A stretch of DNA of 64,000 bases from Isurus oxyrinchus. Lineage: Eukaryota. The translations under genes and the position numbers were made by a program. The stretch covers positions 186,001 through 250,000 of the forward strand of contig JANJGN010000152.1 in assembly GCA_026770705.1 (NCBI GenBank), given 5' to 3'. The notes below the pieces were generated by a model. The model saw only the letters and a list, made by a program, of their open reading frames with translations. It was not told the origin of the DNA and ran no database searches. This document shows positions 4,601 through 47,845 of this stretch, in pieces (the first letter of the stretch is position 1; every line of letters starts with the position of its first letter).

Positions 4601-4796
4601 ATATTGTGAGGAAAGATGTGCCCTAATTAGAAGCAGGAATTCCAGGAGGGAAAGAAAAATAACATTATGCAACACATGATATGGAAAGGCTGACTTCCGA
4701 GAACTATATGGCCTCCTGGATTTCTAGATCAAGATCATAACCACCATGTTATTGTGCCCGTACCTCCAGCAGTAAACAAACAAACACAACATAGGA

Positions 4797-4810
4797 GCTC
4801 CATCTGGTGG
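4797..4810 (-). promoter_or_regulatory. CTCF-like motif
   Basis: Reverse complement CCACCAGATGGAGC matches the CTCF core. Confidence 0.55.
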
Positions 4811-7860: not shown

Positions 7861-8394
7861 GCCTTTGGACTGTGGATAGGAGCTCCTGTGTGATTGAGTT
7901 TGTATCGAATCTCGGGAAGATGCAGCACCAATCTACAGAGGCACTATCAGCCCCTCAAACACACATCGAGAAGAAAACACATTCACCTGGGATCAAACTG
8001 TCACCAAATATTTCCAGGAGCGGCTAAGAAAACAAACTGCAGGATCCGATCCAACCAAAAGGCCATCACAGAGTCAAATTTGAAGGTATCAGTTCTAATC
8101 CCCACGCTCAATAATTTGCTGTCATGCCTAGGAATGTTCTCACCTGACATCCTTGTGTCTCTGGTTCTATGGGATCCGTCGGTGATGAGCTGTCTGACAT
8201 TGAATGGAAGCACCCCGAACTGTACTACAGTCAATGGCCTGATGGAGGAATGGCTGCACTTTTAGAGAAGGGAGTGGAGGAGTGAAACCCTGGTCTGTTA
8301 ATTATCACCAGTAAACTCGGGATTAATAATAGTGACAGAAAACATCCCAGCATTAAGGAAACATTCTCAAACTCGATGGGGACTCTGTACCTGA

Positions 8395-8432: not shown

Positions 8433-8778
8433 TACAAACTGTCTCTGGCCCAGCAACACACTCTGTTCAAATAAATCCTGTGAACAGGCCGCGGCCAAAG
8501 GCTCCAGGAATATGAAAGGGGAAATGGGGAAAGGGGAACTCACTATTACAGACAGGCACTGAAACTGCATTAAAAGGCAAAAAGTAAATTAAGGTGATCA
8601 AATAGCTTTATGACGGTCGGTTATCATACGAATTCGACTTGAAATTAACTAATACAACTTCACAAGTTTTTCTCACCTCTTAATGTTGAGTTTTCTTATT
8701 TGTTATGATTTTTTTGGAAGGCTCCTGTGACTTTCGCTATGGAGGCGGGATTTGTTGTTTCTGTTAAACGGTGTGAGA

Positions 8779-8792
8779 GCACCCTCTGTTGG
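8779..8792 (-). promoter_or_regulatory. CTCF-like motif downstream of RSS
   Basis: Reverse complement CCAACAGAGGGTGC. Confidence 0.55.
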
Positions 8793-8815
8793 GAAGTAAC
8801 AGGAGCGCCCACTTG

Positions 8816-8855
8816 GGTTTTTGTCTGGCATCCGCTGTCTCTCTGCAGCAGTGTG
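8816..8855 (-). other. RSS with 24-bp spacer
   Basis: Reverse complement cacactg + 24 bp + acaaaaacc. Confidence 0.9.
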
Positions 8856-9257
8856 GGCTTCATGGCACAGAAATACACGGTGATGTTTGAGAGAAGATCC
8901 CAGGTGATATTTGAATGGAGAGTTTTGTTTCCTCAGCAGAGGATCTACCTGGTAAACCTGAAGACTTTTCTTCATTTCCCAAGCTATACACCTTCAATAA
9001 ATTACTCGGAACTTCCCCAGGATACTGGAAGAGAGTTGGTGGCAGGGCAGGGTGCCGAGTAATGTTCTGCCTTTCCCGAACCGCTAATTCAGACGGACCC
9101 TGAGACACTGAAACCTCGTCATTTATTACTGCAACACAAATACATACATTTTCAAAAGTCAGGAACTTAATACAACTCCTGGAGGCACAGTGACTATTTG
9201 AACATAGACTCATCAGGCAGCAAGACCATTATTATCAATTAGGAACATGGGGAACAT
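8856..9257 (-). pseudogene. TCR Valpha-like pseudogene (family of V at 11939)
   Basis: Frameshifted leader with donor GT>AT; exon from 9128 (VSVSQGPSELAVRERQNI..) has lost C23 and W41 and is frameshifted before VYFCAMK. Confidence 0.9.
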
Positions 9258-10073
9258 ATAGTGTTCGGTTGAGAATTTGACAGAAAGTAACATAATGCTC
9301 TAAATATATTGATACTATTAGTCTGATATTAAAATGTAACCCAGATCAGAGTCAGATTTCACTTATTGAGACACCAGGGAGCGTTTCCCAGGGACAAGGT
9401 TGGCTGTCAGAACTGATTACAGTTGCGCTCCAGTCACTGAGAGCTGCAAACCAGAGTCTTCTCTGATTGGTTCTTTATCTCTCTCCGATGTTCTCAGAGT
9501 CTTGGTTTGTTTGCCGCGACCTCTGTCTCCCTGGTGAGGCAATCTGTCCTCGAAGTGAATTTCCTCGCTTCTGTAAAAATGCATAGAGGTGGGAACAAAT
9601 AATTTAGGGAATGAATGCAGCGTCTGACAAACTCGGCAAACACGCAGTTACACTAAAACACCACCAGGAGGCATGAACGTTAATGTGGATATCAGATATA
9701 ATTGCGATATCAGACTTAAAATCAATCAAACAATGTCGTTTCTGTTTGTCTCTTTCAATAAAACCGTAGTGACCAGAGACCATAGGGGTGGCATGGTAAA
9801 TATAAAATAGAGGAGTAAGGAAAGGAAACATGAAGCAAATATGCATTTCAAGATAAAGGAGCAAAACGACTTAGGAGTCCCGAGACAGTGAATAAGGAAC
9901 AAGCAAGCAAAGCTGTTAAGTTCTATGATTCTAAGCAGCAATGACCATTGGAGTTCGAAATACGACACAGCAAACCTTCCTGAAGCATTTAATAGAGAGA
10001 GAGAGAGAGAGTGAGAGAGAGAGAGAGAGAGTGGGGTGGGGGAGAGAGATAGGTACGTAGCTACCTGGCTAGC

Positions 10074-10201
10074 NNNNNNNNNNNNNNNNNNNNNNNNNNN
10101 NNNNNNNNNNNNNNNNNNNNNNNNNNNNNNNNNNNNNNNNNNNNNNNNNNNNNNNNNNNNNNNNNNNNNNNNNNNNNNNNNNNNNNNNNNNNNNNNNNNN
10201 N
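10074..10201. other. Assembly gap
   Basis: Run of N. Confidence 1.
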
Positions 10202-11439
10202 ATGGGGTGGGGCTCTGTAGCCAAAATCACAGTGTGCACTCCAATCTGATCTATTATGGGTGTGGCCTGAGTAGCAGCGTGTGTACTAATATACAGGGGC
10301 CTTGGTGGTCTGAGGATGGAGAATTCGCTGCACACTGACACACAACATATCTAATCGTTTCATCGAATTAAACAACCAATTTATCCATTGCAGAGAGAAC
10401 ATTTCACCTCACGTTCTGAGATTGCTCCAGAGCTGGGAGCAAAACGTCCATGTCTGTCGCGCTGCCAGAATGAGTCCCCGAGAAGCGAGTGGAGACATCC
10501 ATCCCGACTGACTGGGGCTGTAGTTAATCCTGGATCCCGAGAGTTGCAATGTCGTTGCCTGATCTGATGCCCAAATCCGTTCCTGAGGAGAGATCGATCA
10601 ACATCTCCTCTGTCTGGGCCTTCAGTTAACTCCAATCCCAGAAATTAGTGGAGAATATACCACGATTCTCACCAATCATGGCATTACAACGAGTCACGCT
10701 TGAGGAGTCCAGTCCAATAAGCAAAGGTGGGAGGAGTCTGAGTTTCCTTTAACATAGGCGAGTGGAGTTATTAGATCAACTGTTGCCTGGGAACTATAAA
10801 AAGCGGCCAATCCTCCCAGCTGCTTGCGGCTGTTGAAAGTTGGATGAAGGGTTGTCTGAAAACCTATCACTTCTATCTTGCTCTGCTCCTAAAATCAACT
10901 CTCAAAAATAATAACACATGATGTTGTGAGTCCACGTCGACATTCACTGATACTGGATCAGTTTACAATTCCTTCAGTCCAAAACATAGAAATTGGGAGA
11001 GAGTAGAAAGTGAGCGGCACTTTTAGCAATTGTATGAACAGGGCTGGATTGAGCGGAGAAAATGCAGCGATTAAGGATAAAGAACGGGGATGGGTCGGTA
11101 GAGATCTGAAATGGTGGGAAAAAGAATGGGATTTGGAACGTAACGAGTGGGAATCAAAAATTCGTCAGTGATGATATGGGCTGAGAAATGGAAATAGGAC
11201 ATTAGAGAGAAAGAATGGGGGATTAGACAGCAGTGTTGGGAGAATAGGGAATGGGCATCAGAGAATAAAATGTGCGGACCGGGGGTTGAAGAGCGAGGGA
11301 TGTTTGAGTACATATCGGGAATGTGTATGTAGATTACTGGGGGAGGAAGACTGAAGGACGTCAGTCATTCTAAATAAATATCCACCAGAAGAGATTGATC
11401 AATACGAATGTGCATGTATATCTCTCAGGGATGCTATCT

Positions 11440-11655
11440 GAGAGACACCGCAGAATGCCCAGCAATGTGGTAAATTGCCCAGGTATGTCCTGTACACAAG
11501 AAACAGGACAAATCCAACCACCCGATCAGACTACTCTCGATAATCAGTAAAGTGATGGAAGGGGTCAACAACAGTGCTACCAAGCAGCACTTGCTTAGCA
11601 ATAAGCCGCTCACTGAGGTCCAGCTTGGGTTCCGCCAGGACCATTCAGCCCCTGA
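11440..11655 (+). mobile_element. Non-LTR retrotransposon RT fragment
   Basis: Encodes ..AMW*IAQVCPVHKKQDKSN..PIRLLSIISKVMEGV.., an RT N-terminal motif. Confidence 0.75.
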
Positions 11656-11938
11656 CTAATTAAGTCAACAACAGTGCGAGAAACACGGATCCTCAGATGA
11701 AGAGATACCGAGAAAGACAGGGAGAAAGATAAAGTCAGGGGAATAATCGGTCCAGAACTAATGGGTTTCGAACTCACATCAGTTCTGAGAGACCAGCCAA
11801 TCATATCGCTAGGAAACGCCTCTCAATTTCTCAATAAGTGAAGCCTGTCCCTGATCCGAATTTCCTCTTTATATCAGAACAGACTGTCAACTTATTTCAA
11901 ATATTACCTTATTTCTTCCGACCTCTAATCTTGACACC

Positions 11939-12370
11939 ATGTGCTGTCTTTGTTCCTTCATGATAATAATACTCTTGCTGCCTGGTGAGTCAATGTGTAA
12001 ATGGTCAATATCTGTTTCACCTGCTTTCTTCAATTCCAGATATTTGCTACATTATGTGTTTTGTTATAGGAACAAATGGCCAAGATTCAGTGTCCCAGAA
12101 TCCCCCTGAATTAACGGTTCTGGAAGGACAGAGCATAGAATTGGACTGTAATTACTCGACAGCTGCTCCAGCTGTGTTCTGGTACACCCAATATTCCGGG
12201 GAAGCTCCGATATATTTAATGAAGATATATAGCTCAGGGAATGCAGACAGGTCTCCAGATTTCCCAGACAAGTTCACTGGTGTTTTGCACAAAGAAAACA
12301 AAACGGTTCATTTGAATGTCGCCGAGTCTGTTCTCTCCGACAGCGCCGTGTATTTCTGTGCCATGAACAC
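11939..12370 (+). CDS. TRAV: TCR alpha/delta V segment, apparently functional
   Basis: Leader 11939-11984 (MCCLCSFMIIILLLP) GT..AG, exon 12070-12370 QDSVSQNPPEL..LDC..FWYTQ..DSAVYFCAMN; C23, W41, C104 intact; CCAAT promoter near 11797. Confidence 0.93.
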
Positions 12371-12410
12371 CACACTGCTGCAGAGATATCGCGGATCCCG
12401 TACAAAAACC
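12371..12410 (+). other. RSS with 24-bp spacer
   Basis: cacactg (12371-77) + 24 bp + acaaaaacc (12402-10). Confidence 0.92.
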
Positions 12411-12420
12411 CCACTGGGAG

Positions 12421-12450
12421 TTCCAGTCAGCGCTCAGCAGAGGGCGGTCT
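12421..12450 (+). promoter_or_regulatory. CTCF-like motif downstream of RSS
   Basis: ttccagt..ctCAGCAGAGGGCGgt. Confidence 0.55.
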
Positions 12451-13157
12451 CACACCGATAAAAAGAAACAATTCAGCCTGTGGGTGTCACAGAGTCATTA
12501 ATAAAATATCAAACCCAAACATAACACTGAACAAGAACAGGTGAGTAGCAACTGAGCAATTCCATACTAAAAATGAATTTCACAAATTAATTTGTGGTGC
12601 GTTGAGTCACATTTTGCATTTTGATGATTTTTCCTTGCCTGTCTGAATTATTTTTCAGCCCTTTCTTCATCCCCATCGTCCTTTTCGAGGTCTCTTTGGT
12701 CTAAGCCTCACATGTTGTCTATTTGATCAGAGTACTTTTCTGGTTCAGGGAAGGTATATGGAAAATGAATACATTTCACAAGGTAATGATTGCGCTCTAT
12801 TAAACAAGCCCCAAGCACAGAGTTCCCTCAATTTTCATTGTCTTTTCGAGTATCTGTTTAATGTTTTCTGACATAATTCACAATCTAGTGATTCTGTTTT
12901 TCAATAACCAGACAAGGGGAACCATCCCCACTCCTGTCCCTAACAATGTAACCATCTCCGTTATATGGACTATAGCCCCGCTCAAACTGTTTCCAGTCGC
13001 TGACAGCCACTCCACCACTTACAGTTCTTAAAGCGTCAACTGAGGCAAAAGAAAGTGAGATGAGAGGATCATGAGAATGACAACCGATTATTGATGGTGC
13101 AGATTAGAGTGAGTTTCTTCCAATCTCAATTTCCCTTTTACAGAGCGGGGAGCGACA

Positions 13158-13630
13158 ATGCCGTCAGGCAGCAATTGGGTTGTATGGGTATTTCTGACAG
13201 GGAACTGTGAAATAGACACATTTCATCTCACTTTCGAAACATGGTTTCAATCTGAATTTTAAACACTCTCCGTTACGAATATTGCCTGTTTGACCATGTG
13301 TTTCAGATCTGCATCATGAAGGCCCTGTCACTCAGGTACTGTCCTCAACTGTTAAGACAGAAGGAGAGGTAGCTGCTTTAAATTTCACCTATGATATTAC
13401 ATGGAGTGACTGTATTTTATTCTGGTACCGGCTGATTCCAATCCGAATGTATTCACAGAGGCAGTCTTACTCATGCCTACAAGCAATCGTTGAGATAGAA
13501 AACAGCAAATGCACCGTTCAGGGAATCAAACTTCTCTCTCTGAGTGGAGAAAGTGACTCTGAAGAGTTAATTAGAAGCAGAACTCTCAGCCGGAGTTAAT
13601 GATGGGAAGCAGTCTCACTCCCCGTACTTT
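13158..13630 (+). pseudogene. TCR Vdelta-like pseudogene (paralog of 6897)
   Basis: Leader 13158-13200 with GG donor; exon from 13307 (GPVTQVLSSTVKTEGE..F..DCILFWYR), C23>F, 3' half replaced by unrelated sequence; RSS spacer remnant aatgatgggaa near 13598; downstream flank matches 7870-8100. Confidence 0.8.
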
Positions 13631-13960
13631 GAGCTATGTTTGGGAGCTCCTGCCTGTTGAGTTTGTATCGAATCTCGGGCAGGTGCAGCCACAATGTTCG
13701 CCGGCCCTGTCTGCCGCTCAGACACAAACAGAGAGGAAACCACATTCACCTCGGATCAAACTGTCACCCATCTGTTTCCAGCGGCGGCCGAGGGAGAAAA
13801 ACTGCAGAATCTGATTCTACAGAACACACCCATCGTCAAATCAATCTACAGGTTAAACCGTTCTTCCTGTTTCTGATCAGCTGTTAATTCCCTTAAACCC
13901 CGGGCTCGATATTCAGATCAACTCCGGGAATGATGTTTCTGATCCTCCAACCTGACTGGC

Positions 13961-14023
13961 TGACGTCACACAGACTGTAGGGTGGCGTCACAAATATTAC
14001 ATATTACAAATGCCCTGACGTAT
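13961..14023 (+). promoter_or_regulatory. CRE cluster upstream of V leader
   Basis: TGACGTCA 13961-68, TGGCGTCA and TGACGTA, 190-255 bp upstream of ATG 14216. Confidence 0.55.
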
Positions 14024-14215
14024 GCGCATTCCACCCCCCCCCCCCCCCCCCCCCCAAACCACGACATCCCATCAAGTGCTAGAGACCCGGGTCTGGCGGA
14101 CACAGTGTAACTGGTGTTGGGCTCAGTTTGATTTGCCACAGGGCTGCCTCCTCCGACAGCCTTCCTTGGCCTGAATCTGTTTAGATTTACTCTACACAAG
14201 TCGATAGGATCCGAC

Positions 14216-14733
14216 ATGAAGCTAAGCTTCCAATCTGTCTGGATGTCTTACTCTTCCCCCCGTATGAGTACGATTGCTATTTCAGACAGGAATAATTTAC
14301 ACATAGTTTTACACATTTGTTATGCTGTGTTACTTTGTACTTTGCTTTATTGCATATCATGTAGTATGTTATGTTGTGCTCTATTGTGCTCTGCTATATT
14401 TTATTGTACTAGATAATATTGCTTTCATGAAATTACTCTATATCTACATATTATTTTCAGATGCAACTGGCAGTGAAGAAGTATCACAGTCTCCTGAGTC
14501 ACTGGGTGTTACCGAGGAAGACACTGCATCGTTGAGCTGTTCCACCACAGCAGCAGGATGAATCCTACAGTGGTACAGACAATAGCCGGACCGCACCGTG
14601 CAGCACCTGGCGACTGGTACCAGCGATCGGGACAGGATCACGGCTCGGTTCATTTCAGCAGAGAGGAGCAGTGCTCTGAATGTTAGTGATGCTCGAGTGA
14701 TAGACACCGCCACCTATTTCTGCGCTGTTGAGG
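14216..14733 (+). pseudogene. TCR Valpha-like pseudogene with very short CDR2
   Basis: Leader 14216-14261; exon from 14461 EEVSQSPESL..LSCSTTAAG*ILQWYRQ*..DTATYFCAVE; two in-frame stops. Confidence 0.92.
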
Positions 14734-14772
14734 CACAGTGCAGCAAAGATCAGGAGGGACCATACAAAAACC
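14734..14772 (+). other. Consensus 23-RSS
   Basis: cacagtg + 23 bp + acaaaaacc. Confidence 0.95.
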
Positions 14773-14963
14773 TGCCAGGGTGACCGTCACGGTTTGTCGT
14801 CGGTGCAGGAATCAGAAAGCTGGGAGGTTCATAAGGAAACGTCCATCAGTCGCCCAATAAAAAAAGATTTCCCTGATCGGAGTTTCCTCTTTAATTTTAG
14901 ACAAGCATTTTCAACATCCGTTTAAAATTCTGTTATTTTCTGTCGAAGCCTGAACCAGACACC

Positions 14964-15330
14964 ATGTTTTCCCGATTGTCCTGTCTGATAATGGCCGTGC
15001 TGTGCGGTGAGCCGATGTTTAAAGGGTCATTGTCTATTTCATGTGTTAAATTCAATCCCAGACTTTGACACATTCTGTGTTTGTTACAGCAACGAGTGGT
15101 GCAGTGGCGCAGACTCACTGCCCCTGGATCCCTCTGAGTTTACTGTCTGGAAGAACAGACCGTAATGATCAGCCATAGTTACTCCATTTCTGTGAGCTTT
15201 CTCTACCTCTGTTGGTACATCAAAATTCCCGGTAAGCTCCGAGATATTTACTGAGACACTGTTACTCGGGGCATGGGGATAAGCCTCAACATTTCCCAGA
15301 CCAGATCTCTGATGATTTGGCCATAGGTGT
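14964..15330 (+). pseudogene. TCR V pseudogene, frameshifted and truncated in FR3
   Basis: Leader 14964-15006 (MFSRLSCLIMAVLC) GTGAG; exon from 15090 with frameshifts (..EEQTVMISHSYS..WYIK..APRYLLR..FPDQIS); no RSS. Confidence 0.82.
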
Positions 15331-15445
15331 TTACAGCAATTCTAATGTTTCACACGTAAAGCTGTCAGTTTTTGTTCTCTACGAACCCAGAAACAAACTA
15401 ACTTCTCAGTTGGAGCCACCAAGAACACTTAGCCTAACTCGCTGA

Positions 15446-15484
15446 GGTTTTTGTACGGGCTCCTGGCTTTTATGTGAGGCTGTG
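15446..15484 (-). other. 23-RSS
   Basis: Reverse complement cacagcc + 23 bp + acaaaaacc. Confidence 0.92.
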
Positions 15485-16014
15485 CCTCACTGCACAGTAA
15501 TAGACCGCCCCATCCTTCACACTCAGTCTGCTTATATTGAGATAACCGTACTGTTTAGACTTGTCAGCAGCCGCCAGATATCGTCCTGAGATTTCATCTT
15601 TTCTCAGCCCTACTACTTTGGTAATTATCCAGCTTGGAGGCTGTGCCGAATAATGCCGATACCATTGCATACTGTATATAGCCTTGTCTGTATATTCGCA
15701 ATCTAACTGCACCGAACCCCCTTCTGACACGCTTAAAATCACTGGGGTCTGAGTTACTGGATCGGCACACAGGCCGCCTGTGAAAGTAGAAAAACAGAAG
15801 AGTATACGGTTAAAGAGGATCCATCTAAACATCTGTCTATCTAAATGACTGTGCGCAAATTCCAATGAACAAAGCTGTTCACAATATGTATACATCTGAT
15901 CGTTAATCATATTAATTGCTAGTGCAAGCCCTTTGCCTCAATGTGCTAACCTGTTTTTATGAACATAATCCAGTACTTACTGCCCAAGATAGCCGCCAGT
16001 ATAATGAGAAACAT
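15485..16014 (-). CDS. TRAV: TCR alpha/delta V segment, apparently functional, inverted
   Basis: Leader 16014-15981 (MFLIILAAILG) GTAAGT; exon 15777-15485 DPVTQTP..LDCEY..MQWYRH..DGAVYYCAVR. Confidence 0.93.
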
Positions 16015-16149
16015 GTCTGACTGAATCTCTCTCAGTGAATATGAATGGAATGAGCCAGAGATTGAAAAGGAGAGAGGGAATCGGGCTTTGTTCAGCTCAT
16101 TGTTCCACCCACGATCGGCAGGGGGCTAGGCCCGTTGTGATCTCACTCA

Positions 16150-16228
16150 GGCAACCAATCAATTGGCTTTGACGTTGGCCACACGTGACTTTCTAATTAG
16201 CATACCTCGACTTGGCGCCCTCTGCTGG
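16150..16228 (-). promoter_or_regulatory. V promoter with CTCF motif, E-box and CCAAT
   Basis: Reverse complement CCAGCAGAGGGCGCC (16214-28) and GTCACGTG, both conserved in the paralogous promoter at 19917-19965. Confidence 0.65.
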
Positions 16229-16439
16229 TGGAATCTGTTTTCATCCGGTTAAGGGGGCCATTGATTAGATTTTGTGTTTATCGGTTTACATATCAAAACA
16301 CGAATGTTATTTTTTCCCCCAGAAGTCTAAATTGGAGCTGATCAGAATCAATCTTTTTTTTCCGTTGATGTTTATGTAGTATTTAAATAATATTGAAAGT
16401 TTATAACTCGCTGTTTAGGGATCAGGGAACCACCATTTA

Positions 16440-16940
16440 CATAGAATGTCAAGATATTGGAGATAATAGACCAGAATAGTACCTGGGATGACGGCCTCCA
16501 ATGTGAATGGACGAAGGAAATTGGTAATACTTTTCTTATGTAAAAGAATTAAAGGAGGTAGTTAATTGAAGTGCTCAAAATTATAAGAGGTTTGATGAAC
16601 TAGATCGTGTACTGTTGTTTCCACTGGCAGAAAATTTGATAATCCAAGTAGCCAAGTTTAAGAGAAAAGAGACAGGGAAAGGTTATATTCACTTATTACA
16701 CAGCCATGTGTTCAAATATGGATTGTACTGTCTAAAAGGATGACAGAATATTCATTAGAAACTTTCAGAAGAAAATTGTATGTAACTTAGAAGAAAATTA
16801 TACGCAACTTAAAAGAAGAAAAAACTGCCGGCCTTCATAGAAAATATGGGGTTGAAAGATGAATTGATAACTCTTCCAATGAGGCATAGACATGATAGGC
16901 CAAATAGCCTCAATTCTTTGCTCTAATATTCGATTATTCT
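16440..16940 (+). mobile_element. Old CR1 3' fragment
   Basis: Degenerate match to CR1 C-terminus and 3'UTR (ttgtttccactggcag; gataggccaaatagcctc). Confidence 0.6.
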
Positions 16941-17277
16941 TGTTCCTTCATGTCCCTCCCACTCTATTTGTTGTCAGACACTTGAACAGTCAGCAGGTGC
17001 GGGCTAGTCATTCACATTGAATGTTCAACCGTCACTATTTCCCCTCCATCATTTCCGAGTGCAGCTGAGAGTCACCGCACACTTCACTCAACATTGAGTC
17101 TACAGTATACTCGCCCACAGCTTCCATTTGCTGCTCTCGCTCTGACTCGATTGTGTGTTTGGAGAGATTGCTGCCGCTGTTCCATTCCTGTCATTGGTTG
17201 GATCAGCAGTGCAGTGGGACGGGGATCTGTATTTCTGCTCTTTCTCGCACTGCAGGGTTAAAGACGTAGGAAGTGTC

Positions 17278-17783
17278 ATGGGGAACTGTTTTGCTTTTTT
17301 CCTCATCATTATGTCACTTCCAAGTAAATATTTCATTCCCAGTGAATAATCCATTTTCCTCTAATTACTATGACACAGATATTGTTGTTAACAAAGCAAT
17401 AGTGATGGCGATGATGATGATTCTGTTGATCAATGTGAGGCTGATACTGATTGTTGTTATTGCTATTGTTTTATGTTAGAATGGAGCCACCAAGACAAAG
17501 TGGAACAGTTGGTTGCTGCAATAATGTTTGACGAGAAAAGTAATATCACAGTGGATTGCATATTGAAAACACGTACTGATAACCCTTACGTGTACTGGCA
17601 CAGTCAGTGCCACGAGCAGCCTCCACAGTACATGCTTCATATTCTGGGAGGGAAGCCATTCAGACATAAGGATATCAGTGATTAGTTTTCAACATTGTTC
17701 AATAAAACTACCAAGATTACCGAACTCACGATCGGTAACATCCTGATCTCTGACAGCGCGCAATATTTCTGTGCCTTGGACCC
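17278..17783 (+). pseudogene. TCR V pseudogene with a single nonsense codon
   Basis: Leader 17278-17323 (MGNCFAFFLIIMSLP); exon from 17480 QDKVEQ..VDC..YWHSQ..DISD*FSTLF..DSAQYFCALD; TAG at 17683-85. Confidence 0.9.
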
Positions 17784-17823
17784 CACGCTGCTGCAGAGAT
17801 ATAGCGGATCCCACACAAAAACC
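17784..17823 (+). other. RSS with 24-bp spacer
   Basis: cacgctg + 24 bp + acaaaaacc; CTCF-like ttcaacagagggtact at 17847-62. Confidence 0.88.
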
Positions 17824-18439
17824 CTCACTGAGAGTTCCCGTTAGTGTTCAACAGAGGGTACTCTCAAACCGATAAACAGAAGCAATAATCCCGCCTCTGC
17901 AGTGAGAAAAATTGCAAACATCTACAGCCTTCTGCAATAATAGAAACTGACAATTTCTGCAGTAATATTCATTTGCGATTTCAACTTACATATCTGATAA
18001 CATTAACATTACGGGCCAATTTGTGGTGCCTTACGTCACTTCTTTCTCTTTCGATGCCTTTCCTGCCGACATGGTCATTCTCACGCCATCTCTCCACGCG
18101 TTACCCATATTTTCAGACATCTCCTTCTTTGGTCTTTGGTTTAAAGATTTCAAACCTTTGATACTTCTTTGAACATTAACTCAAAACTATGCTAACTCAG
18201 CCGGCCATAGGGTTTGCCTCAGTTTTAACCGATTTAGCCAATGAAAACTTAATTTATTATTTACTTATTTACCAATCCTGACACGCCTGTGTTCACCCTG
18301 TTCTCCCCCAATTTGGAATAAATATGAAATTACAGCAGCTGTTATCGAGAGGCAGAGTTATATTATTTTAGAAGGGGACATAAATATTGAATTAATCTCC
18401 TTACAAATGGATTCGACGTGTGACAACACTTCCTGCTCC

Positions 18440-18700
18440 AGCCCCGCCCACAGCTTCCTTTGCTGCCTTCTCTCTGATCCGCCTTGCCTGCCCTGTGTGA
18501 TTGGACAGATTGGTGCCGCTGTTCTCTGTTTGGCATTGTTTAGATCAGCGGTTCAGCCGAGCGGGGCTCGGTATTTCTGCTCTGACAGAGAATTTCCAGG
18601 GCTGCAGAGCTACAGAAAGAAGAATCATCATGTGGAACCATACTGTACAGCTCCTTCCTATTATATCAGATCTCACTAAGTATTTCCTTCCGAGTAAAAC
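18440..18700 (+). pseudogene. Orphan V promoter and leader (paralog of 17110-17345)
   Basis: gcccacagcttcc..gattggtgccgctgttc..tatttctgctct..atgtggaac; V exon missing. Confidence 0.65.
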
Positions 18701-18714
18701 TTTATTCCCCTTCG

Positions 18715-18960
18715 AGTACAAGCGTACGAACGAGGAGCAGCAGTAGGCCATTCAGTCCCTCGAGCCTGCTTCGCTATTTAGCAACTTGAAATGTTCACCC
18801 CACCTACCCCCGCTGTCCTATCACCACCTCTCTTACCAAGAATCTATCCACATCTTTCTTAAAATATTCAAGGACTCTGCTTCCATCGCCTTTTCAGGAA
18901 AAGAGTTCCAAAGGCTCTCGATCCCCTGAGTGAAAAAAATCGCCTCATCTCTGTTTCAAT
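18715..18960 (-). mobile_element. CR1 3' end fragment
   Basis: gtaggccattcagtccctcgagcctgct..gagttccaa..cgcctcatctctgtt is the reverse complement of the CR1 3' end. Confidence 0.8.
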
Positions 18961-19090
18961 TCAGGTCCCTGGTTCACTGTACAGCTGAGCTACCCAATGG
19001 CAAGAACAGACCAACGGAAGAAATACCTCCAAGAACAAAACCGGGCCAGAGCAGAGGAACAAACGGAAGCTGTGGCCGGCGATGCTGCAG
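18961..19090 (-). promoter_or_regulatory. Inverted orphan V promoter (family of 17110)
   Basis: cactgtacagctga..ccaatggcaagaa..ggaagctgtggcc matches reverse complement of 17110-17230. Confidence 0.55.
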
Positions 19091-19916
19091 CTTGAAAACT
19101 GATAAAAGTGCACGGCGGTGACCAGCTGCAGCCGGAACTGATGGAGCAGAAATAGCGACGGTTGAAACTCCAGACGTCTCCGAGCATCCTGCACCTGTTC
19201 ACACATCAAATGGCTGAGAAAAACTAGTAAGGGAGGGCAGGAAGGGACCAGAATTATAAAAAGATACGGAACGGAATGAGGACTCCGCTTACCGTATCTG
19301 TGTCTATTTAAAAGGCCCATCACAATCGCCTTTCACACCGCACATTTTCCACGCTGTTTTCCTTTCTCAAGTTATAACAATTCCATATTGAAATTTATGA
19401 CTGGATCCTCTTCCCCCGTTATTTTAGGCACCTATTCCAGATGTTAACACGTACAATGTAATAAACAAAACAGATCTTTGTCCCTCTGTTGTTTTCATGA
19501 AATCGAAATGATTTGGTTATTGAATTTTCTGATAATGGAAGCAACTGCGACCTAATCTGTCAAATGGGCATAATTTTTTAGCACATCTCTTTTACCTTCT
19601 TTGTTACGAGGGCAAGAATCCAAGTTTCTCTAGACTATTCCAGCAAACGTTCCTCATCTCTGGTGCCATTCTGGTGTACAGCGTCCGCACTTTCTCCAAA
19701 AAATTTGCATTACTTCTACTTTGTCGCACCCAGGATTTGGACAGAGAATCCAGGGATGATTTCTAAAGATTTATAAATACTCTCTGACATAAACATCAGC
19801 AGCAACGAAGACTGTGTCTAAACAGCTCCACTTTAGGCTTTGGGGGCACCTTTGTGTCTTGATAAGCATTTCAAAAACTGAATGGCAGCATCCGAAGAGG
19901 GATTGAATCGGATTCC

Positions 19917-19965
19917 CCAGCGGAGGGCGCCAAGTTCAAGCATGGGCGTCACTAAGTCACGTGTT
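19917..19965 (+). promoter_or_regulatory. V promoter with CTCF motif and E-box
   Basis: CCAGCGGAGGGCGCC 19917-31 and GTCACGTG, ~190 bp upstream of ATG. Confidence 0.62.
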
Positions 19966-20122
19966 GGAAACGCCAAAAGGGATGATTCCCTGAGTGAGGT
20001 CACAATGGGCCTCACTGCAGTGTGTGGGTGGAACAATAAGCTGAACAGAGCCCGGGTTCCCTCTCTCCTTCTCAATCTCTGGCTCATTCCATTCATATTC
20101 ACTGACAGAGATTCAGTCAGTC

Positions 20123-20651
20123 ATGTTTCTGATAATACTGGCGGCGCTGCTGGATAGTAAGTACTGGATTAAGTACATCACGGCAGATCAGTAGATTAAT
20201 GTAGAGACATTGCGTTGGTAATTAATACAATTAACGATCTGAAATATCCAGACGATCGAGAGCTGGGTAAATAGGAGGTTCTACAAACTTACATAGCTAC
20301 AAACAAATATTGATCAACACGGTTTAACTGCTTGATATTTCATTCCTCTACCTCACAGGCGGAATATGCGGAGATCCAGTCACTCAGGCTCCAGCTGCAA
20401 TAACGGTTTCAGAGGGCGATTTGGTGCAGTTAGACTGTGAATATGCAGAAAAGAATATCTATTCCATGCAATGGTACCGGCAGCAAACGGCACAGCCACC
20501 AAAATGGATTATCACCAATATCTTAGCACTGAAGGAAGATGTAATTTCAGGACGATATCTGGCGGCTGCTGACATGTCTCAAAAGAACGGTTACCTCAAT
20601 ATAAGCGAACTGAGTGTGGAGGACGGGGCGCTGTATTACTGTGCAGTGAGG
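20123..20651 (+). CDS. TRAV: TCR alpha/delta V segment, apparently functional (paralog of 16014)
   Basis: Leader 20123-20156 (MFLIILAALLD) GTAAGT; exon 20359-20651 DPVTQAP..LDCEY..MQWYRQ..DGALYYCAVR. Confidence 0.93.
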
Positions 20652-20690
20652 CACAGCGTCAGATCGCAGCGAGAATCCCGTACAAAAACC
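20652..20690 (+). other. 23-RSS
   Basis: cacagcg + 23 bp + acaaaaacc. Confidence 0.93.
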
Positions 20691-21069
20691 TCATCGGTTT
20701 TTGCTCCGTGGTTCCAGAGATGTAAAACAGGCAGGTCTATGTACCGCAGTTTTATTGCTCTATTTGTCCTTGTCCAAATCCACAAAAGAGCAGTTTTGGG
20801 AAATATGCAAAATTATCTCCATGCCGCCATTTATAGGGTAAATATCTACGAGCCGAACCGGGACATCGATTTGCCAACAGAGGAAAAGAAATCTCTCAGA
20901 AGTGGAGTCCCTGTAGCTGATAATTATGGGCTGTTCTTACAAAATCGTTAACTCAAGTGGACCCAGGGTGAATTGGTGGAGGGGTGGATTGATCAGTTTA
21001 TTGTACCTATTTCCACAAACACTTGATTTAATTTTCCTTTTATATATCATTCTGTTAATTTCATTCTTG

Positions 21070-21370
21070 TTCTGGAAGCTACTCCTTGTCACTGGGGAAA
21101 GAATCAGGTATTAGTTTATCGGGAACGCAAGGAGAATCATTTCGCTTCACCATAACTCCATTTTTGCTGCAAATGAACTTATATTCTTGAGCCGGCATTT
21201 CTGAAATCGAGCTCCTGAGCATCCCGTCCCATATTCAGTGATGAAAGAGTTGAGGGATGATTTAGAGTATCTGTGCACTGTGAGCAAGTCTCTACCACTC
21301 TCATCGTTCACTTGGTTCAGTTCCCAGATGCAGTAGTGCAGTACGGTGAAACACGGGGAGGCAAGGACGT
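21070..21370 (+). pseudogene. Highly decayed V relic (paralog of 31700)
   Basis: ..ELIF..RAPEH..ERVEG*FRVSVHCEQVSTTLIVHLVQFPDA; heptamer remnant tacggtg. Confidence 0.55.
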
Positions 21371-21569
21371 CAGGAGGCTGTAGTAGAACTCATTCGACAT
21401 GGGGACTGGGGAGGCAATCTGGACATGGGCTTTAGAAGCGAGATTGCTACCAGTCAATTCTACAAAAAAAAGCAGTTCATCATCCGAATAATTTAACGGA
21501 ATGAAAATATCTTTATTATTTATAATAACATAATAATATGCAGATTAATCATCTGTGCAAAAATCAATC

Positions 21570-21902
21570 AAACATGGAAAGGATCCTTCCTCTTGTAGGC
21601 GAATCTAGAACTAGGGGACATTGTACAAAAATAAGCGGTCTCCTATTTAAAACAGAGATGATAAGAATGTTTTGTCTCGGAAAGTCGGGGGTCTTTGGAA
21701 ATCCCTTCCTCAAAGGGCAGGGCAAGCAGGGTCCTTGAATGTTTTCAAGGCAGAGAGAGATCAATTTTTGATAAGCAAGTAAGTGGAAGATAACCGGGGG
21801 TAGGTGGGAGGTTGCAGTCAGATCAGACATGACCTTATTGAATGGAGGAGCAAGCTCGAAGGGCCGACAGGCCTACTAAAGCTCCTATTTCCTATGTTTG
21901 TA
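21570..21902 (+). mobile_element. CR1 3' fragment
   Basis: MERILPLVGESRTRGH..; 3'UTR gctcgaagggccgacaggcctac. Confidence 0.85.
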
Positions 21903-22273
21903 TATATTTGATTTGAATGACATAGTCCTTTGATGATTAGGGTGCTCACAAGCCTTACATTCTTCCGAAATGAACAATCACAACCTCATCAGTTGCGTAT
22001 TAATGAATTTATGAACAAGAGTCTCATCTATTTATGGAAATGAACAGGTACTGCCATAATGACGTGGGCACCTCAGAAAGCTGAGGCAAATAATCTAGGA
22101 ATGAATATTAAATAGTAAAGGTATCATAAGCAAAACAATGAACAGATAAAAGTTACAGTAATAGTAAAACTAAAGCTATGAGAACCACAACAATGTGGCA
22201 GAATAATCATGCGGCAATATCTTGCAGCAATATTCGAGAATAAATTGAGCGTCGTTGTTTTACAGACAATATT

Positions 22274-22287
22274 CCACTGGATGGCGC
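22274..22287 (+). promoter_or_regulatory. CTCF-like motif
   Basis: CCACTGGATGGCGC; paralogous copy at 32907. Confidence 0.5.
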
Positions 22288-22783
22288 TCCAGGACCTTGC
22301 CTTTGGAGAAAACTTAAACCGTCAGTTCACCGCTCTGACAGGTGACAGCTGGGGATTACAGGAAATATTTTGGCGCTGTGACACGTTACTGCCAACAATA
22401 CTGTATATAGGGCAAGGATTAATAGGTGAATTACACAAGAGACTTAAAGACGGAGGCATATAAATCATTTTATTTCATGGTCCAATGTCACTGCGTTGTA
22501 GATTTTCATTGTTAATTCAAGTGTCAGGTATAGGCAATGTAGATATACTTCATGATTCTTGTCTTTTCAATACGCTCTGAGATTTTAATATAACTGCTGC
22601 CATTTAAACTTTGTTATGACTAGATTTGGCCGATTGTAAACGCAATTTAAATTATAATCTAATATAATTTCATGAGTGGGCCTCACTTCTTGTTATTGGG
22701 TGCTCTGCTTCGTTGCAATATTAAGAAAATCCATGTGAATCCCAGTGGAGGCTGTATTACTGTTTCCATATATTGGTGTGAGA

Positions 22784-22796
22784 GCGCCCTCTGGTG
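22784..22796 (-). promoter_or_regulatory. CTCF motif downstream of RSS
   Basis: Reverse complement CACCAGAGGGCGC, near consensus. Confidence 0.65.
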
Positions 22797-22821
22797 AGCG
22801 CCAACTGGCCCTCTCAGCGTG

Positions 22822-23350
22822 GGTCTCTATCCAGGATACGTGATATCGCTCCATCAATTTGGGCACCATGGCATGGAAATCCAGGAGAGTGTGAGAGATC
22901 AGAGTGTGGCTGATCTTTAACTCAGTATATTGGTAATTTCGTTAACATAGAACGGAATAGATCAGTGAATGACGCGCAGGTTCATGTTTACATTCCCCCA
23001 TAAGATAAGATGAATTATGTATTGTGGAGACTGGCCTTGTTCCTGGCTGTACCAGTTCACGAAAGGGCGAGAATCGTTTCTCTTCAAGATACTACTAGGT
23101 GTGAAATGACTTCCCCCTTCAGACGTAATTTTTGGGAAAGGCATCTTGGTTAAAACAGGCGCACGGGGAATGGATTTTTACTGGGGGAAAATAATTATAT
23201 TATTTCGTTGGACGGGGTCGTGAAAATCTTCATCCACATTCAACACGTGCAGTTTTTGAGACGATGGTCAATTAGATATCAAACAATCTCTCAGATCAAT
23301 AAGAGATCAAACTGTCTATATTTACTTGCCTGCCTCTCTGATCAGCAGAA
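22822..23350 (-). pseudogene. TCR V pseudogene (family of 17278) with degenerate 24-spacer RSS
   Basis: Exon from 23180 (..SEGGSHF..RPFVNWYSQEQGQSPQYIIH..); RSS caaattg + 24 bp + atagagacc at 22861-22822. Confidence 0.75.
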
Positions 23351-42699: not shown

Positions 42700-45549
42700 G
42701 TCACAATCAATGGTTCTTACTTAAACACACCTAGTATTTTGAACAAAATAAATGAATTAACGGCGCATATAGATGTTAATGGGCATTATCTTATCGTCAT
42801 TACTGAGACATGGTTTCAAGGAGATCAGCACTGGGAACGAAACGTTTAGGGGAATGTGGCTTTTCGAATGGATGGGCAGGTAAAAAGGGTGGTGGGCAGT
42901 TTTGTTAGTACAAGATGGAATAAGTACGATAGCAAGGAATGATCTTGATCGGAAGATGTGGAATCCATATGGGTGGAGGTAAGAAATAACAAGACACTGG
43001 TAGGAGTAGTCCATAGGCCCCCTAATAGTAACTATGCTGTTGGACAGAGAATGAGTCAGGGAATAATGAGGGCATGTAAACAAGGCAGTGTATTAGTCAT
43101 GAGTGACTTGAATCTCCATGTCGATTGGGAAAATCAAATTAGCAGAGGTAGCCACGAGGAATAATTCATAAAGTGTATTCGGGACAGTTTCCTGGAATAA
43201 TATTTTTAGGATCCAACCAGGGATCAGACTACGTTGCATCGGGTAATGTGTCATGAGGCAGGTTTAATAAATGATCTCAGAGTAAAAGATCCCCGAGGAA
43301 ACAGTGAACATAACATGGTGGAATTTAGCATTCAGTTTGAGAATGAGAAACTTAGTTCGGAAACACCTGTGCTAATCATAAATAAGGGTAATTACAAAGA
43401 AATTGGGGCAGAGTTGGCTGTAGTAGGCTGGGAAAGGAGTTTAGCAGAAAAGATGGTTGATGAACAATGGCAGACGTTTAAAGATATAATACATGACTCA
43501 CAACAACGATATATCACAGCGAGGAACAAGGATTGTAGCAAGGGGATAAACCAACCATGGTTAACCAAGAAAGTTAAAGACTATACCAAAGTGAAAGAAA
43601 AACATGCAATGAGGTCAACATTATGGTAAGCCAGAGGATTGGCAAAGTTGTAAAAGCCAACATAAAATTACTAAAAAAAATAGAGAGGGAGAAAATAAAA
43701 TTTGAGGGCAAACTAGCAAGTAGTATAAAAACGGACAGTAAGAACATCTTTAAATATATAAAAAGGCCAAAGTCAATATAGGCCCCTTAAAGAATGAGGC
43801 TCGGAAAATATTAATGGGGAACCAAGAAATGGCAGAGGAGTTGAATAAATGCTTTGCGTCAGCTTCTCGTTTGGAATCACTAATAGCATACCAGAAATAT
43901 TAAATAATCATGAGGAAATATGGGGAGGAAATAAATACACTAACTGTCACTGGAGAGAAAGTGCTGGGGAAAATAATCGGGCTAAAGCCTGATGGACTGA
44001 ATCACAGGATATTAAAGGAAACAACCGCAGAGGTAATGGATGCGCTGGTATTAATCTCCCAAGAGCCCTTAGATTCTGGAAAAATCCAAGAGGATTGGAA
44101 AATTGAAAATGTAACACCCTTCAGAAAGGGAGCGAGACAAAAAACAGGTAACTATCGGCCAGTTAGCTTAACATCTGTCATTGCGAAAATGTTGGAGTCT
44201 CTTATAAAGAATGTAATAGCAGAGCATTTAGAAATGCATAATCTAATCAAGCAGAATAAGCATGGCTTCATGAAGGGGAAATGATGTCTGACATGTTTAG
44301 TAGAATTCTTTGAGGTGGTAACAAGCAAGATAGATAAAGGGAAACCTGTAGATGTAATATGTTTTGATTTCCAAAAGGCGTTCGATAAGGTAGCACACAT
44401 AAGGCTGCTTAATAAGATAAGAGCCCATGGTGTTTTTGGTAGCGTATTAGCATGGATAGAGGACAGGCTAACTAATTGAAGACAGAGAGTTGGGATACAG
44501 GAGCCATTTTCAGGATGGCAAACTTTAACTAGTGGAGTGCCACAGGGATCAGTCCTGGTGCCACAATTATTTACAATATATATTAATGACTTGGATGAGG
44601 GAAGTGGATATACTATTGCCAAGTTTGCACATGGCACAAAAATAGTTCGGAAGGCAAGAGGTGAGGATGACACAAAGAGTCTACAGAGGGATATAAGCAG
44701 ATTAAGTGAATGGGCAAAAACGTGGCAGATGGAATATAATGTGGGAAAATGTGAGGCTATGCACTTTGGCAGGGAGAATAGCGGAACTGATTATTATTTA
44801 AATGGGGAAAGACTGAAGAAAGCTCCAGTGCAGAGGGATTCGGGTGTCCTCCTGCATGAGTTCCAAAAAGCGAGCAGTGTTCAGCAGGTAACAGGGAAGG
44901 CAAATGGAATGTCGGCCTTTATTTCAAAGGGAATGGAATATAAAAATGGTGAAGTCTTGCTAAAACTGTACATGGCATTCCTTAGTTCACACTTAGAAAG
45001 CAGTGAACAATTTTGGTCTCCTTTTCTAAGGAAAGATATACTGACATTTGAGGCAGTCCAGAGAAGGTTCACTGGGTTGAGCCAGAGGATGGAGAGATTT
45101 TCTTATGAGGAGGGGTTGAGTAGTTTGGATCTGAACTCACTGGCGTTTAGAAGAATGAGAGGCGACCTTATTGAAACATGTAACATCCTTTGTAGGGGCT
45201 TGACAGGGTAGTTGCTGAGAGGGTATTCCCCTTGTGGGAGAGACTAGGGCCAGAGGGCATCATCTCAGAGTAAGGGGACGCCTACTTAAAACAGAGATGA
45301 GAAACATCTTCTCTCAGAGGGCAGTGAATCTGTAGGATTCTTTGCCACAGTGGGCTGTAGAGGCTGGGCCGTTAAGTAAATTCAAGGCTGAGATAGACAG
45401 ATTTTTAATCAGTAAGGGAATCAAGGGTTATGGGAAAAGGCAGGAAAGTGGAGTTCAGGGTTATCAGATCATCCACGATATCATTGAGTGGCGGAACAGA
45501 CGCGATGGGCCGAATGGCCTACTTCTGTTCCTATGTTTTATGGTGTTAT
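42700..45549 (+). mobile_element. CR1 LINE, near full-length degraded ORF2 (APE endonuclease + RT) and 3'UTR
   Basis: IVITETW, ESIWVEV, NYRPVSLTSV, DFQKAFDKV, VPQGSVL, YINDLD, KFA(H/D); multiple stops and frameshifts. Confidence 0.95.
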
Positions 45550-47479: not shown

Positions 47480-47845
47480 AACAGAGATGTCTGTGCATTG
47501 ACTGGTGTCTCTCAGTTCCCACTCCCCCAAGGAGATACTGTACACTGATTGGTGTCTCTCAGTTCCAGTTCCCCTGGGTGATATCTGTACAATGACTGGT
47601 GTCTCTCAGTCCCGTCTCCCTCAGGGAGATATCTGTACACTGGCTGGTGTCTCTCAATTCCCAGTCCCCCAGGGAGATACTGTACACTGACTGGTGTATC
47701 TCAGTTCCAGTTCCTCAGGGTAATACCTGCACAATGACTGGTGTCTCTCATGCCCCTCTTTGTCAGCGAGATATCTTTAAACTGACTGGTGTCTGTCCGT
47801 ATATCTCACTCAGTGAGATATATGAACACTAAGTGGCATCTCTCA
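47480..47845. repeat. 47-48-bp minisatellite, ~8 copies
   Basis: ggtgt(c/a) at 47504, 47551, 47598, 47646, 47693, 47740, 47788. Confidence 0.9.

What the first reader, a model, noticed from the sequence alone, without database searches (positions are those of the whole stretch)
8760..22861. Shared 24-bp-spacer RSS + CTCF-site cassette on two divergent V families
Seen: four V segments (RSS 8816-8855-, 12371-12410+, 17784-17823+, 22822-22861-) all have a 24-bp spacer (consensus ctgcagagatatcgcggatccc..), while the other intact V-associated RSSs here have 23. Each is followed ~20-25 bp after the nonamer by a CTCF-core motif (CCAACAGAGGGTGC, CAGCAGAGGGCG, CAACAGAGGGTAC, CACCAGAGGGCGC). The 12070 and 17480 V exons are very different proteins, yet their ~100-bp RSS+flank align at roughly 83% by hand. 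Known: 23+/-1 spacers recombine at reduced efficiency, and RSS-adjacent CTCF elements promote use of mouse D-proximal VH genes during RAG scanning. Inference: a portable 3' module, moved between families by recombination in FR3, in which a CTCF anchor may offset a suboptimal RSS. This would suggest loop-extrusion-type V selection in cartilaginous fish.
Basis: partly seen in the sequence, partly recalled or inferred. Interest (0 to 1): 0.8.

Follow-up and report, generated by a model that had tools for sequence, protein, structure and literature searches.

The report
Shark V-gene signal with CTCF-like site
Four T-cell-receptor V gene segments of two unrelated families in this shark window share one copied block, a recombination signal followed by a CTCF-like site, a layout known from mouse antibody genes but not tested for function here.

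Summary
Four V segments (8855-, 12371+, 17784+, 22861-) have a 24-bp-spacer RSS followed 23-24 bp later by a CTCF-like core. The other four V segments have 23-bp spacers and no such flank.

The carriers fall into two V families with about 33% amino-acid identity. Their RSS plus flank is 78-84% identical. Site patterns that separate the families stop just before the heptamer: 41:5:8 in the V exon against 1:4:0 in RSS plus flank. The block therefore has its own, younger history, most likely exchange between families at the V 3' end rather than inside FR3.

Contigs of three other coded organisms carry the block behind both kinds of V, so the arrangement is old.

The idea that the CTCF site compensates for a weak RSS is not supported:
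- Spacer and motif are linked by descent, so they count as one lineage.
- Three of the four carriers are pseudogenes.
- Two cores have lost a key C.
- A 23-spacer family has its own CTCF-like site, but at the promoter.

CTCF binding and use of these V segments in rearrangement could not be tested. This scan had already noted the same block on other pieces of this genome.

The parts
8856..9417 (-). A1: family-A V gene unit, a pseudogene with a frameshift, a 16-nt deletion that removes the first Cys, and stops
8816..8855 (-). A1 RSS: CACACTG, 24-bp spacer, ACAAAAACC
8740..8815 (-). A1 shared flank: 23-bp linker, CTCF-like core at 8778-8792 (CCAACAGAGGGTGCT, 2 mismatches), conserved post-core block
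10074..10201 (.). Assembly gap in non-coding DNA between the A1 and A2 units, outside every feature of the finding
11939..12370 (+). A2: the only intact carrier. Leader exon 11939-11984, phase-1 intron, V exon 12070-12370. It matches Pfam V-set and its best solved relatives are TCR alpha V domains.
12371..12410 (+). A2 RSS: CACACTG, 24-bp spacer, ACAAAAACC
12411..12490 (+). A2 shared flank: linker containing GAGTTCC (12419-12425), CTCF-like core at 12434-12448 (TCAGCAGAGGGCGGT, 1 mismatch), post-core block
17278..17783 (+). B1: family-B V gene unit. Leader 17278-17323, V exon 17480-17783 with a single in-frame TAG at 17683-17685.
17784..17823 (+). B1 RSS: CACGCTG, 24-bp spacer, ACAAAAACC
17824..17897 (+). 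B1 shared flank: linker containing GAGTTCC, weakened CTCF-like core at 17848-17862 (TCAACAGAGGGTACT, 3 mismatches), post-core block
22862..23160 (-). B2: family-B V exon remnant with many stops
22822..22861 (-). B2 decayed RSS: CAAATTG, 24 bp, ATAGAGACC
22746..22821 (-). B2 shared flank with a well-kept CTCF-like core at 22783-22797 (TCACCAGAGGGCGCT, 1 mismatch)
16214..16228 (-). Context: perfect CTCF-like 15-mer about 200 bp upstream of the leader ATG of the 23-spacer V segment C1, on the same strand as that V
19917..19931 (+). Context: homologous CTCF-like 15-mer (1 mismatch) about 190 bp upstream of the leader ATG of the 23-spacer V segment C2

Best explanation
The four V segments carry copies of one inherited block of about 110-150 bp. 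It comprises the last few coding bases, a 24-bp-spacer RSS, a 23-24-bp linker, a CTCF-like core on the V sense strand, and about 23 further conserved bases.

Shown: the block's history is separate from and younger than that of the V exons it follows. It has therefore been exchanged between two old V families, by gene conversion or unequal crossing-over, with a boundary at the V 3' end or heptamer. The 24-bp spacer and the CTCF-like site go together only because they are physically linked in this block.

Inferred: where the core is intact (A2, B2), it binds CTCF with its N-terminal side facing away from the V. There it would act like the CTCF-binding elements just 3' of mouse D-proximal VH RSSs. 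It would stall cohesin-driven loop extrusion so that the adjacent RSS stays longer at the RAG-loaded recombination centre.

Inferred: the 24-bp spacer is a neutral or nearly neutral marker of the lineage, not a defect that the site repairs.
For: Block and boundaries:
- blastn finds A2-B1 82% identical over -37..+101 relative to the heptamer, and A1-B1 81% over -20..+113, with nothing upstream. A1-A2 align from -593 to +100.
- The window holds only four copies and no solo copy.
- Identity falls after about +100-115.

Separate history:
- Site patterns are 41:5:8 in the exon against 1:4:0 in RSS plus flank.
- The probability of at most 1 family-specific site in 119 bp is 3e-8 at the exon rate and 0.012 at one third of that rate.
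- Block identity between families is not lower than within family A.
- Variable sites are mostly singletons, so the flat identity is not saturation.

Age:
- In contigs of four coded organisms, records match A2 from about 12334-12345 onward. The letters before that point read by eye like family B.
- Records of organisms B, C and E span the RSS and the core.

Likeness to a CTCF site:
- 6 matches with at most 1 mismatch against 0.34 expected.
- A2 and B1 have GAGTTCC, 6 of 7 bases of the upstream CAGTTCC, one base further from the core than the layout read from PMC10484683 and PMC12885311.
- The two-part CTCF motif is conserved as far as lamprey (PMC5504073).
- A CTCF orientation code and loop extrusion are reported for a skate (PMC10115646).
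- Mouse precedent: passages of PMC7930373 and of bioRxiv 10.1101/2020.01.01.891473.
Against: - No binding, chromatin or repertoire data exist here. The four RNA-labelled runs of organism A held none of the sampled words, and all laid runs are contigs.
- The core is no better conserved than its neighbours: core 10/15 invariant, post-core 14/23, spacer 12/24. This fits simple co-inheritance.
- A1 and B1 carry T at core position 12, and B1 has 3 mismatches.
- Three of the four carriers are pseudogenes, whereas the mouse review says pseudogenes there lack adjacent CBEs.
- V segments lie on both strands of this window, so not all the sites can face one recombination centre.
- The exchange inference rests on four copies and 5 informative sites in the block.
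- The upstream-like motif is off by one base and absent from A1 and B2.
Confidence: 0.55

Rival explanations
1. Hitch-hiker. The CTCF-like sequence is just part of a duplicated or converted flank. It does not bind CTCF in lymphocytes and has no role in V choice.
For: - Conservation is uniform over the spacer, core and post-core, not peaked on the core.
- Two of the four cores have lost the C at position 12.
- Three of the four carriers are dead genes.
- CpG content shows no sign of a protected site.
Against: - CTCF-like 15-mers are about 18-fold enriched in the window, and 5 of the 6 lie in the V cluster.
- An unrelated V family carries one, co-oriented, at its promoter.
- The upstream-like GAGTTCC lies near the right distance from the core.
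- B2 keeps the core (2/15 differences from the majority) while its RSS decayed (13/39). That difference is not significant.
- Most paralogous contigs in four organisms read C at 12447, so the commonest core reading differs from A2's at this position; both letters fit the consensus.
Confidence: 0.3
2. Ancestral element without exchange. The common ancestor of families A and B already had this RSS plus flank. Purifying selection alone kept it while the V exons diverged.
For: - The block follows both families in four organisms, so it is old.
- RSSs, and possibly a CTCF site, are under constraint.
Against: - Only 1 family-specific site in 119 bp, although each copy has since acquired about 10% private changes.
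- Between-family distance is no greater than within-family distance.
- The presumably free linker and spacer are as alike as the motifs.
- The neutral intron and 5' flank of A and B are unalignable.
Confidence: 0.12
3. The 24-bp spacer weakens the RSS, and the adjacent CTCF anchor was selected to offset that.
For: In this window 4 of 4 24-spacer RSSs have the motif, and 0 of 4 23-spacer RSSs have one next to the RSS.
Against: - All four carriers are copies of one block, so the association has one degree of freedom.
- 23+/-1 bp is a natural spacer length.
- Read one base earlier, at a 23-bp spacing, the nonamer still has As at positions 5-7. This follows directly from the sequence and is my inference.
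- The 23-spacer family C also has a CTCF-like site, at its promoter.
- 1 of 4 carriers is intact against 3 of 4 non-carriers.
Confidence: 0.05
4. The flank is a fragment of a transposable element that brought a CTCF motif, as SINEs did in mammals.
For: CTCF sites spread by retrotransposition in mammals (statement in PMC5504073). LINE reverse-transcriptase fragments occur in the window.
Against: The window has no copy of the flank without a V and RSS in front of it. In the laid contigs the flank is not deeper than the RSS. Homology always starts at the V 3' end.
Confidence: 0.03

Closest known systems
CTCF-binding elements just 3' of the RSS of D-proximal VH segments in the mouse Igh locus (for example the VH81X-CBE)
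   Same: A CTCF-type motif lies directly downstream of a V 23-type RSS. It is on the strand that points the CTCF N-terminal side away from the V, towards what lies downstream.
   Different: - Here the locus is of TCR alpha/delta type, in a cartilaginous fish.
- The motif is part of a copied block shared by two V families.
- Dead genes carry it too, whereas the review says mouse pseudogenes lack adjacent CBEs.
- Binding and any effect on usage are untested.
Promoter-side CTCF sites of V segments (recalled for mammalian Tcra V segments; not checked in a paper here)
   Same: Family C in this window has a conserved, co-oriented CTCF-like 15-mer about 200 bp upstream of the leader.
   Different: The finding's block places the motif on the RSS side, not the promoter side.
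Concerted evolution and gene conversion among tandem V segments
   Same: A short tract is homogenised between paralogues while the neighbouring sequence keeps the family tree.
   Different: The tract is non-coding and regulatory (RSS plus flank), and it crosses family boundaries. The V exon itself is not converted.

Membership tests
23-type recombination signal sequence | Heptamer starting with CAC, directly abutting the V coding end | tested here: met
   A1 and A2 have CACACTG and B1 has CACGCTG. B2 has CAAATTG and does not meet the feature.
23-type recombination signal sequence | A-rich nonamer ACAAAAACC at 23+/-1 bp | tested here: met
   A1, A2 and B1 have a perfect nonamer at 24 bp. B2 has 3 of 9 bases changed. 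The natural range of 23+/-1 comes from passages of PMC212687.
23-type recombination signal sequence | Used by RAG in lymphocytes, that is, the segment is found rearranged | not testable with these tools
   No RNA run held the stretch, and all the runs are contigs.
CTCF-binding element | Match to the core motif bound by zinc fingers 3-7 | tested here: inconclusive
   Against a recalled 15-mer consensus, A2 and B2 have 1 mismatch, A1 has 2 and B1 has 3. Such matches are enriched in the window. No weight matrix such as JASPAR MA0139 was available.
CTCF-binding element | Optional upstream motif (CTGCAGTTCC-like) about 8 bp 5' of the core | tested here: inconclusive
   GAGTTCC is present in A2 and B1 only, 9 bp from the core rather than 8. 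That a one-base spacing variant exists is recalled, not checked.
CTCF-binding element | Occupancy by CTCF and cohesin in vivo | not testable with these tools
   No ChIP, CUT&Tag or ATAC data could be reached.
RSS-associated CBE that promotes V use (mouse proximal VH type) | Lies directly 3' of the RSS, oriented towards the recombination centre | tested here: inconclusive
   The position is met (23-24 bp after the nonamer, sense strand). The direction of the J-C region from this window is unknown, and carriers lie on both strands.
RSS-associated CBE that promotes V use (mouse proximal VH type) | Loss of the element lowers use of that V, and pseudogenes lack it | tested here: not met
   The mutational half of this feature cannot be tested here. 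The second half fails: three pseudogenes carry the element, and B2 has a near-perfect core (against the review passage).

The most novel reading that the evidence does not exclude
The RSS plus CTCF-site block is an old regulatory cassette under selection. Sharks move it between V families by exchange at the coding-end/heptamer border. From recall, RAG is active in shark germ cells, so that could conceivably be the route. The cassette would tether V segments to the recombination centre during cohesin-driven RAG scanning. If so, CBE-assisted V selection would date back to the ancestor of jawed vertebrates and would operate at a T-cell-receptor locus, not only at mammalian Igh.
Probability: 0.12. 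Interest if true: 0.85.

Novelty: new variant of a known kind. Interest (0 to 1): 0.5.

Why it matters
RSS-adjacent CTCF elements are so far an experimentally shown feature of mouse Igh proximal VH segments. My three searches found no paper on the same geometry in a cartilaginous-fish TCR locus. The 2025 shark Ig/TCR linkage paper has no occurrence of 'CTCF' or 'spacer' in its main text; its supplements were closed.

If CTCF binds these sites, loop-extrusion control of V choice would be an ancestral trait of jawed vertebrates. The shark's many natural copies, with intact and decayed cores, would then form a ready-made mutational series.

The new result in this report is that the RSS plus flank has a history apart from its V exon. 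This also warns against counting such copies as independent evidence for any link between spacer length and the motif.

Tried and rejected
1. Cross-species copies through proteins. The word search with the A2 V exon gave 1 hit of 1 candidate, on a 923-bp JGI contig.

2. Metagenome scan with an RSS-only pattern, chosen so as not to condition on the CTCF core. It returned 12 loci. None resembles the A2 region by blastn, so they are chance matches.

3. RNA evidence for rearranged A2. The four RNA-labelled runs of organism A held 0.00 of the sampled words, and everything is kept as contigs. Nothing can be said about usage.

4. CpG observed/expected as a sign of a protected, unmethylated site. The blocks score 0.51-0.74 against 0.5 for the window, similar to the other V regions, so there is no signal.

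5. Core better kept than the RSS in the dead copy B2. It shows 2/15 against 13/39 differences, which is suggestive only. An earlier hand count that I put through Fisher's test (1/15 against 26/87, p=0.11) is superseded.

6. Solo copies or a transposable-element origin. None were found in the window.

7. FR3 as part of the block. Rejected by the control with the other families.

8. The list of best-supported differences as a conservation profile. Rejected, because 308 rows were not shown.

Full report
WHAT IS THERE. The window holds a cluster of eight TCR-type V segments between 7.5 and 23 kb. A scan for heptamer, spacer and nonamer and a six-frame scan for V-domain landmarks find them. I label them below by the first heptamer base and strand.
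- D: 7822+, 23-bp spacer, open frame.
- A1: 8855-, 24-bp spacer.
- A2: 12371+, 24-bp spacer.
- E: 14734+, 23-bp spacer, two stops.
- C1: 15484-, 23-bp spacer, open frame.
- B1: 17784+, 24-bp spacer.
- C2: 20652+, 23-bp spacer, open frame.
- B2: 22861-, 24-bp spacer.

The V exons of A2, C1, C2 and D match Pfam V-set (54.9, 59.6, 60.8 and 40.2 bits). The best solved relatives of A2 are TCR alpha V domains. The sequencing runs that hold this DNA are coded, so I cannot name the species.

THE GAP. The N stretch at 10074-10201 follows a GA microsatellite. It lies in non-coding DNA, about 650 bp beyond the 5' end of A1-A2 homology on one side and about 1,580 bp before it on the other. Its 600-bp flanks share only 8-11-base chance words, so there is no overlap. 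No V exon, RSS or motif touches it. Continuity across it is unknown. Only A1's distance and orientation relative to the others depend on scaffolding. C1 and B2 are inverted within unbroken sequence.

A1, A2 and B1 have CAC-type heptamers, 24-bp spacers and perfect nonamers. B2 has the same 24-bp spacing with a decayed heptamer and nonamer. A 15-mer resembling the CTCF core begins 23, 23, 24 and 24 bp after the nonamer, on the V sense strand. Mismatches to a recalled consensus are 2, 1, 3 and 1. In the whole window, matches with at most 1 mismatch number 6 against 0.34 expected, and 0 of 100 shuffles reach 6. The four 23-spacer V segments have no such flank. From the heptamer onward, A2 and B1 are 83.5% identical over 103 bp.

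WHO CARRIES IT. A1 and A2 are one family: 68% DNA identity over 701 bp, from the 5' flank through leader, intron and exon to +100. B1 and B2 are another family (68% over 193 bp plus 75% over 61 bp). A2 and B1 share 32 of 98 residues. That is barely more than A2 shares with C1 (31/94) or E (29/89). No A-to-B DNA similarity is detectable upstream of about -40.

Only A2 is intact. A1 has a frameshift and a deletion that removes the first Cys. B1 has one in-frame TAG. B2 is riddled with stops.

THE BLOCK HAS ITS OWN HISTORY. In a four-way alignment I counted the sites that support each of the three possible pairings.

| Region | By family (A1A2/B1B2) | A1B1/A2B2 | A1B2/A2B1 |
|---|---|---|---|
| V exon | 41 | 5 | 8 |
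| Last 40 coding bases | 4 | 0 | 1 |
| 119 bp from the heptamer on | 1 | 4 | 0 |

The contrast gives Fisher p=0.02. At the exon's density of family-specific sites about 19 would be expected in the block. The probability of at most 1 is 3e-8, or 0.012 even at a third of that rate.

Block identity between families (80% and 83.5%) is not lower than within family A (78%). Variable sites are mostly private to one copy, so the flat identity is not saturation. The neutral intron and 5' flank align within families but not between them. A long A-to-B separation should therefore have left fixed differences in the block, and it did not. I conclude that RSS plus flank was exchanged between the families after they diverged.

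The boundary is not in FR3. The last 12 codons are 23/36 alike between A2 and B1, against 18-21/36 between A2 and families C, D and E. Family-specific sites continue to -5. The exchange border therefore lies between about -5 and +19, at or near the heptamer. The 3' border is near +100 to +115.

As a contrast, the much younger pair C1/C2 (68 of 98 residues identical) loses homology 5 bp after its nonamer.

OTHER ORGANISMS. I laid contigs of four coded organisms on 11700-12700 at 80% likeness.
- 151, 120, 42 and 56 records were laid.
- Summed depth peaks over the end of FR3 and the RSS in three of the four runs.
- In every run some records match A2 only from 12334-12345 onward. By eye, the unlike letters before that point resemble family-B FR3. 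One 30-letter consensus matches B2's sequence at 24 of 30 positions by my hand count.
- Records of organisms B, C and E span the RSS and the core, for example 12370-12488, 12331-12523 and 12206-12462.
- At 12447 most paralogous contigs read C, giving GCGC where A2 has GCGG. Both letters fit the S at that position of the recalled consensus, so this shows only that A2's G is a private variant.

The block behind both kinds of V is therefore older than the split of these organisms. The best pieces from organisms B and E are about 94-96% identical to the window. Contigs cannot give copy numbers, and the organisms are unnamed.

IS IT A CTCF SITE? In favour:
- The enrichment of CTCF-like 15-mers, with 5 of the 6 good matches lying in the V cluster.
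- A second, unrelated case. Family C has a conserved, co-oriented match about 200 bp upstream of the leader ATG in both members.
- A2 and B1 have GAGTTCC, which is 6 of 7 bases of CAGTTCC, part of the 'CTGCAGTTCC-like' upstream motif quoted in PMC12885311 (passages).
- The contacts described in PMC10484683 (passages) put that motif at -18..-9, with T at -12 and C at -10. Here it sits one base further out. By my own arithmetic, a 6-of-7 match within one base of the right place has a chance of about 0.004.
- Lamprey CTCF binds the same two-part motif (abstract and passages of PMC5504073).
- A skate shows a CTCF orientation code at domain borders (passages of PMC10115646). Using the mammalian consensus on a shark is therefore reasonable.

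Against:
- The core (10/15 invariant) is no better kept than the post-core block (14/23) or the spacer (12/24).
- A1 and B1 carry T at core position 12, where the consensus has C.
- There is no CpG signal.
- There are no binding data.

THE COMPENSATION IDEA. The four carriers are one lineage, so '4 of 4 against 0 of 4' is a single observation. Spacers of 23+/-1 bp are natural (passages of PMC212687). The five-A run means that a 23-bp reading still has A at nonamer positions 5-7; this is my inference. A 23-spacer family has its own CTCF-like site. One of four carriers is intact against three of four non-carriers. I see no support for compensation.

COMPARISON WITH WHAT IS KNOWN. Proximal mouse VH segments have a CBE just 3' of the RSS that raises their use, and pseudogenes there lack one (review PMC7930373, passages). 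'Several dozen' such VH segments are mentioned in passages of bioRxiv 10.1101/2020.01.01.891473. By PMC12885311, the N-terminal side of CTCF faces downstream of the motif as written. In this block it would therefore face away from the V, as a scanning anchor should for a V in deletional orientation. The direction of J-C from this window is unknown, and carriers lie on both strands.

Three searches found no paper on RSS-adjacent CTCF sites in cartilaginous fish (listings and abstracts only). The 2025 paper on shark Ig/TCR linkage has no 'CTCF' or 'spacer' in its main text. Its supplements, which may hold locus annotation, were closed.

EARLIER NOTES OF THIS SCAN. The same block was noted on at least eight other pieces of this genome. 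Three follow-ups concluded that spacer and motif were copied together. My tests agree. They add the site-pattern evidence that the block's history differs from that of the V exons, the placing of the border at the heptamer, and the promoter-side sites of family C.

VERDICT. This is a real, old, shared RSS-plus-flank block. It was exchanged between two V families and carries a plausible but unproven CTCF site. The proposed functional link to the 24-bp spacer is unsupported.

Noticed in passing
window 16214-16228(-) and 19917-19931(+): The two members of the 23-spacer family C each have a CTCF-like 15-mer (0 and 1 mismatch). It lies about 200 bp upstream of the leader ATG, on the V strand, at the very edge of their homology block and next to E-box and CCAAT-like elements.
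   Followed up: partly
window 14834-15319(+): A third family-A V remnant, aligning with A2 from -560 to -84 at 67% identity. It lacks the end of FR3, the RSS and the block, and it abuts the 3' flank of the inverted C1.
   Followed up: partly
window 15440-15484(-) and 20652-20696(+): Homology between C1 and C2 (75% over 808 bp) stops 5 bp after the nonamer, an abrupt border right at the end of the RSS.
   Followed up: no
window 7863-8050(+) and 13627-13815(+): The 190 bp just downstream of the RSS of V segment D recurs at 77% identity about 1 kb upstream of V segment E, with no recognisable V in front of it.
   Followed up: partly
window 57023-58014(-): An intronless class-A GPCR reading frame, split into two ORFs. 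It matches Pfam 7tm_1 (81.8 bits), and its nearest solved relatives are opioid, somatostatin and P2Y receptors. Earlier notes of the scan mention GPCR clusters beside TCR V arrays in this genome.
   Followed up: partly
window 44537-45211(+) and 52385-53044(+): Reverse-transcriptase (RVT_1) fragments of LINE-like elements lie in the V-free half of the window.
   Followed up: no
window 4796-4810(-) and 22274-22288(+): Two further CTCF-like 15-mers (1 mismatch each) that are not adjacent to an RSS or a leader. The second lies about 500 bp beyond B2's block and points towards it.
   Followed up: no
window 47484-47830: A tandem array with a 47-bp (or 142-bp) period, about 6.6 copies at 78-85% match.
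   Followed up: no
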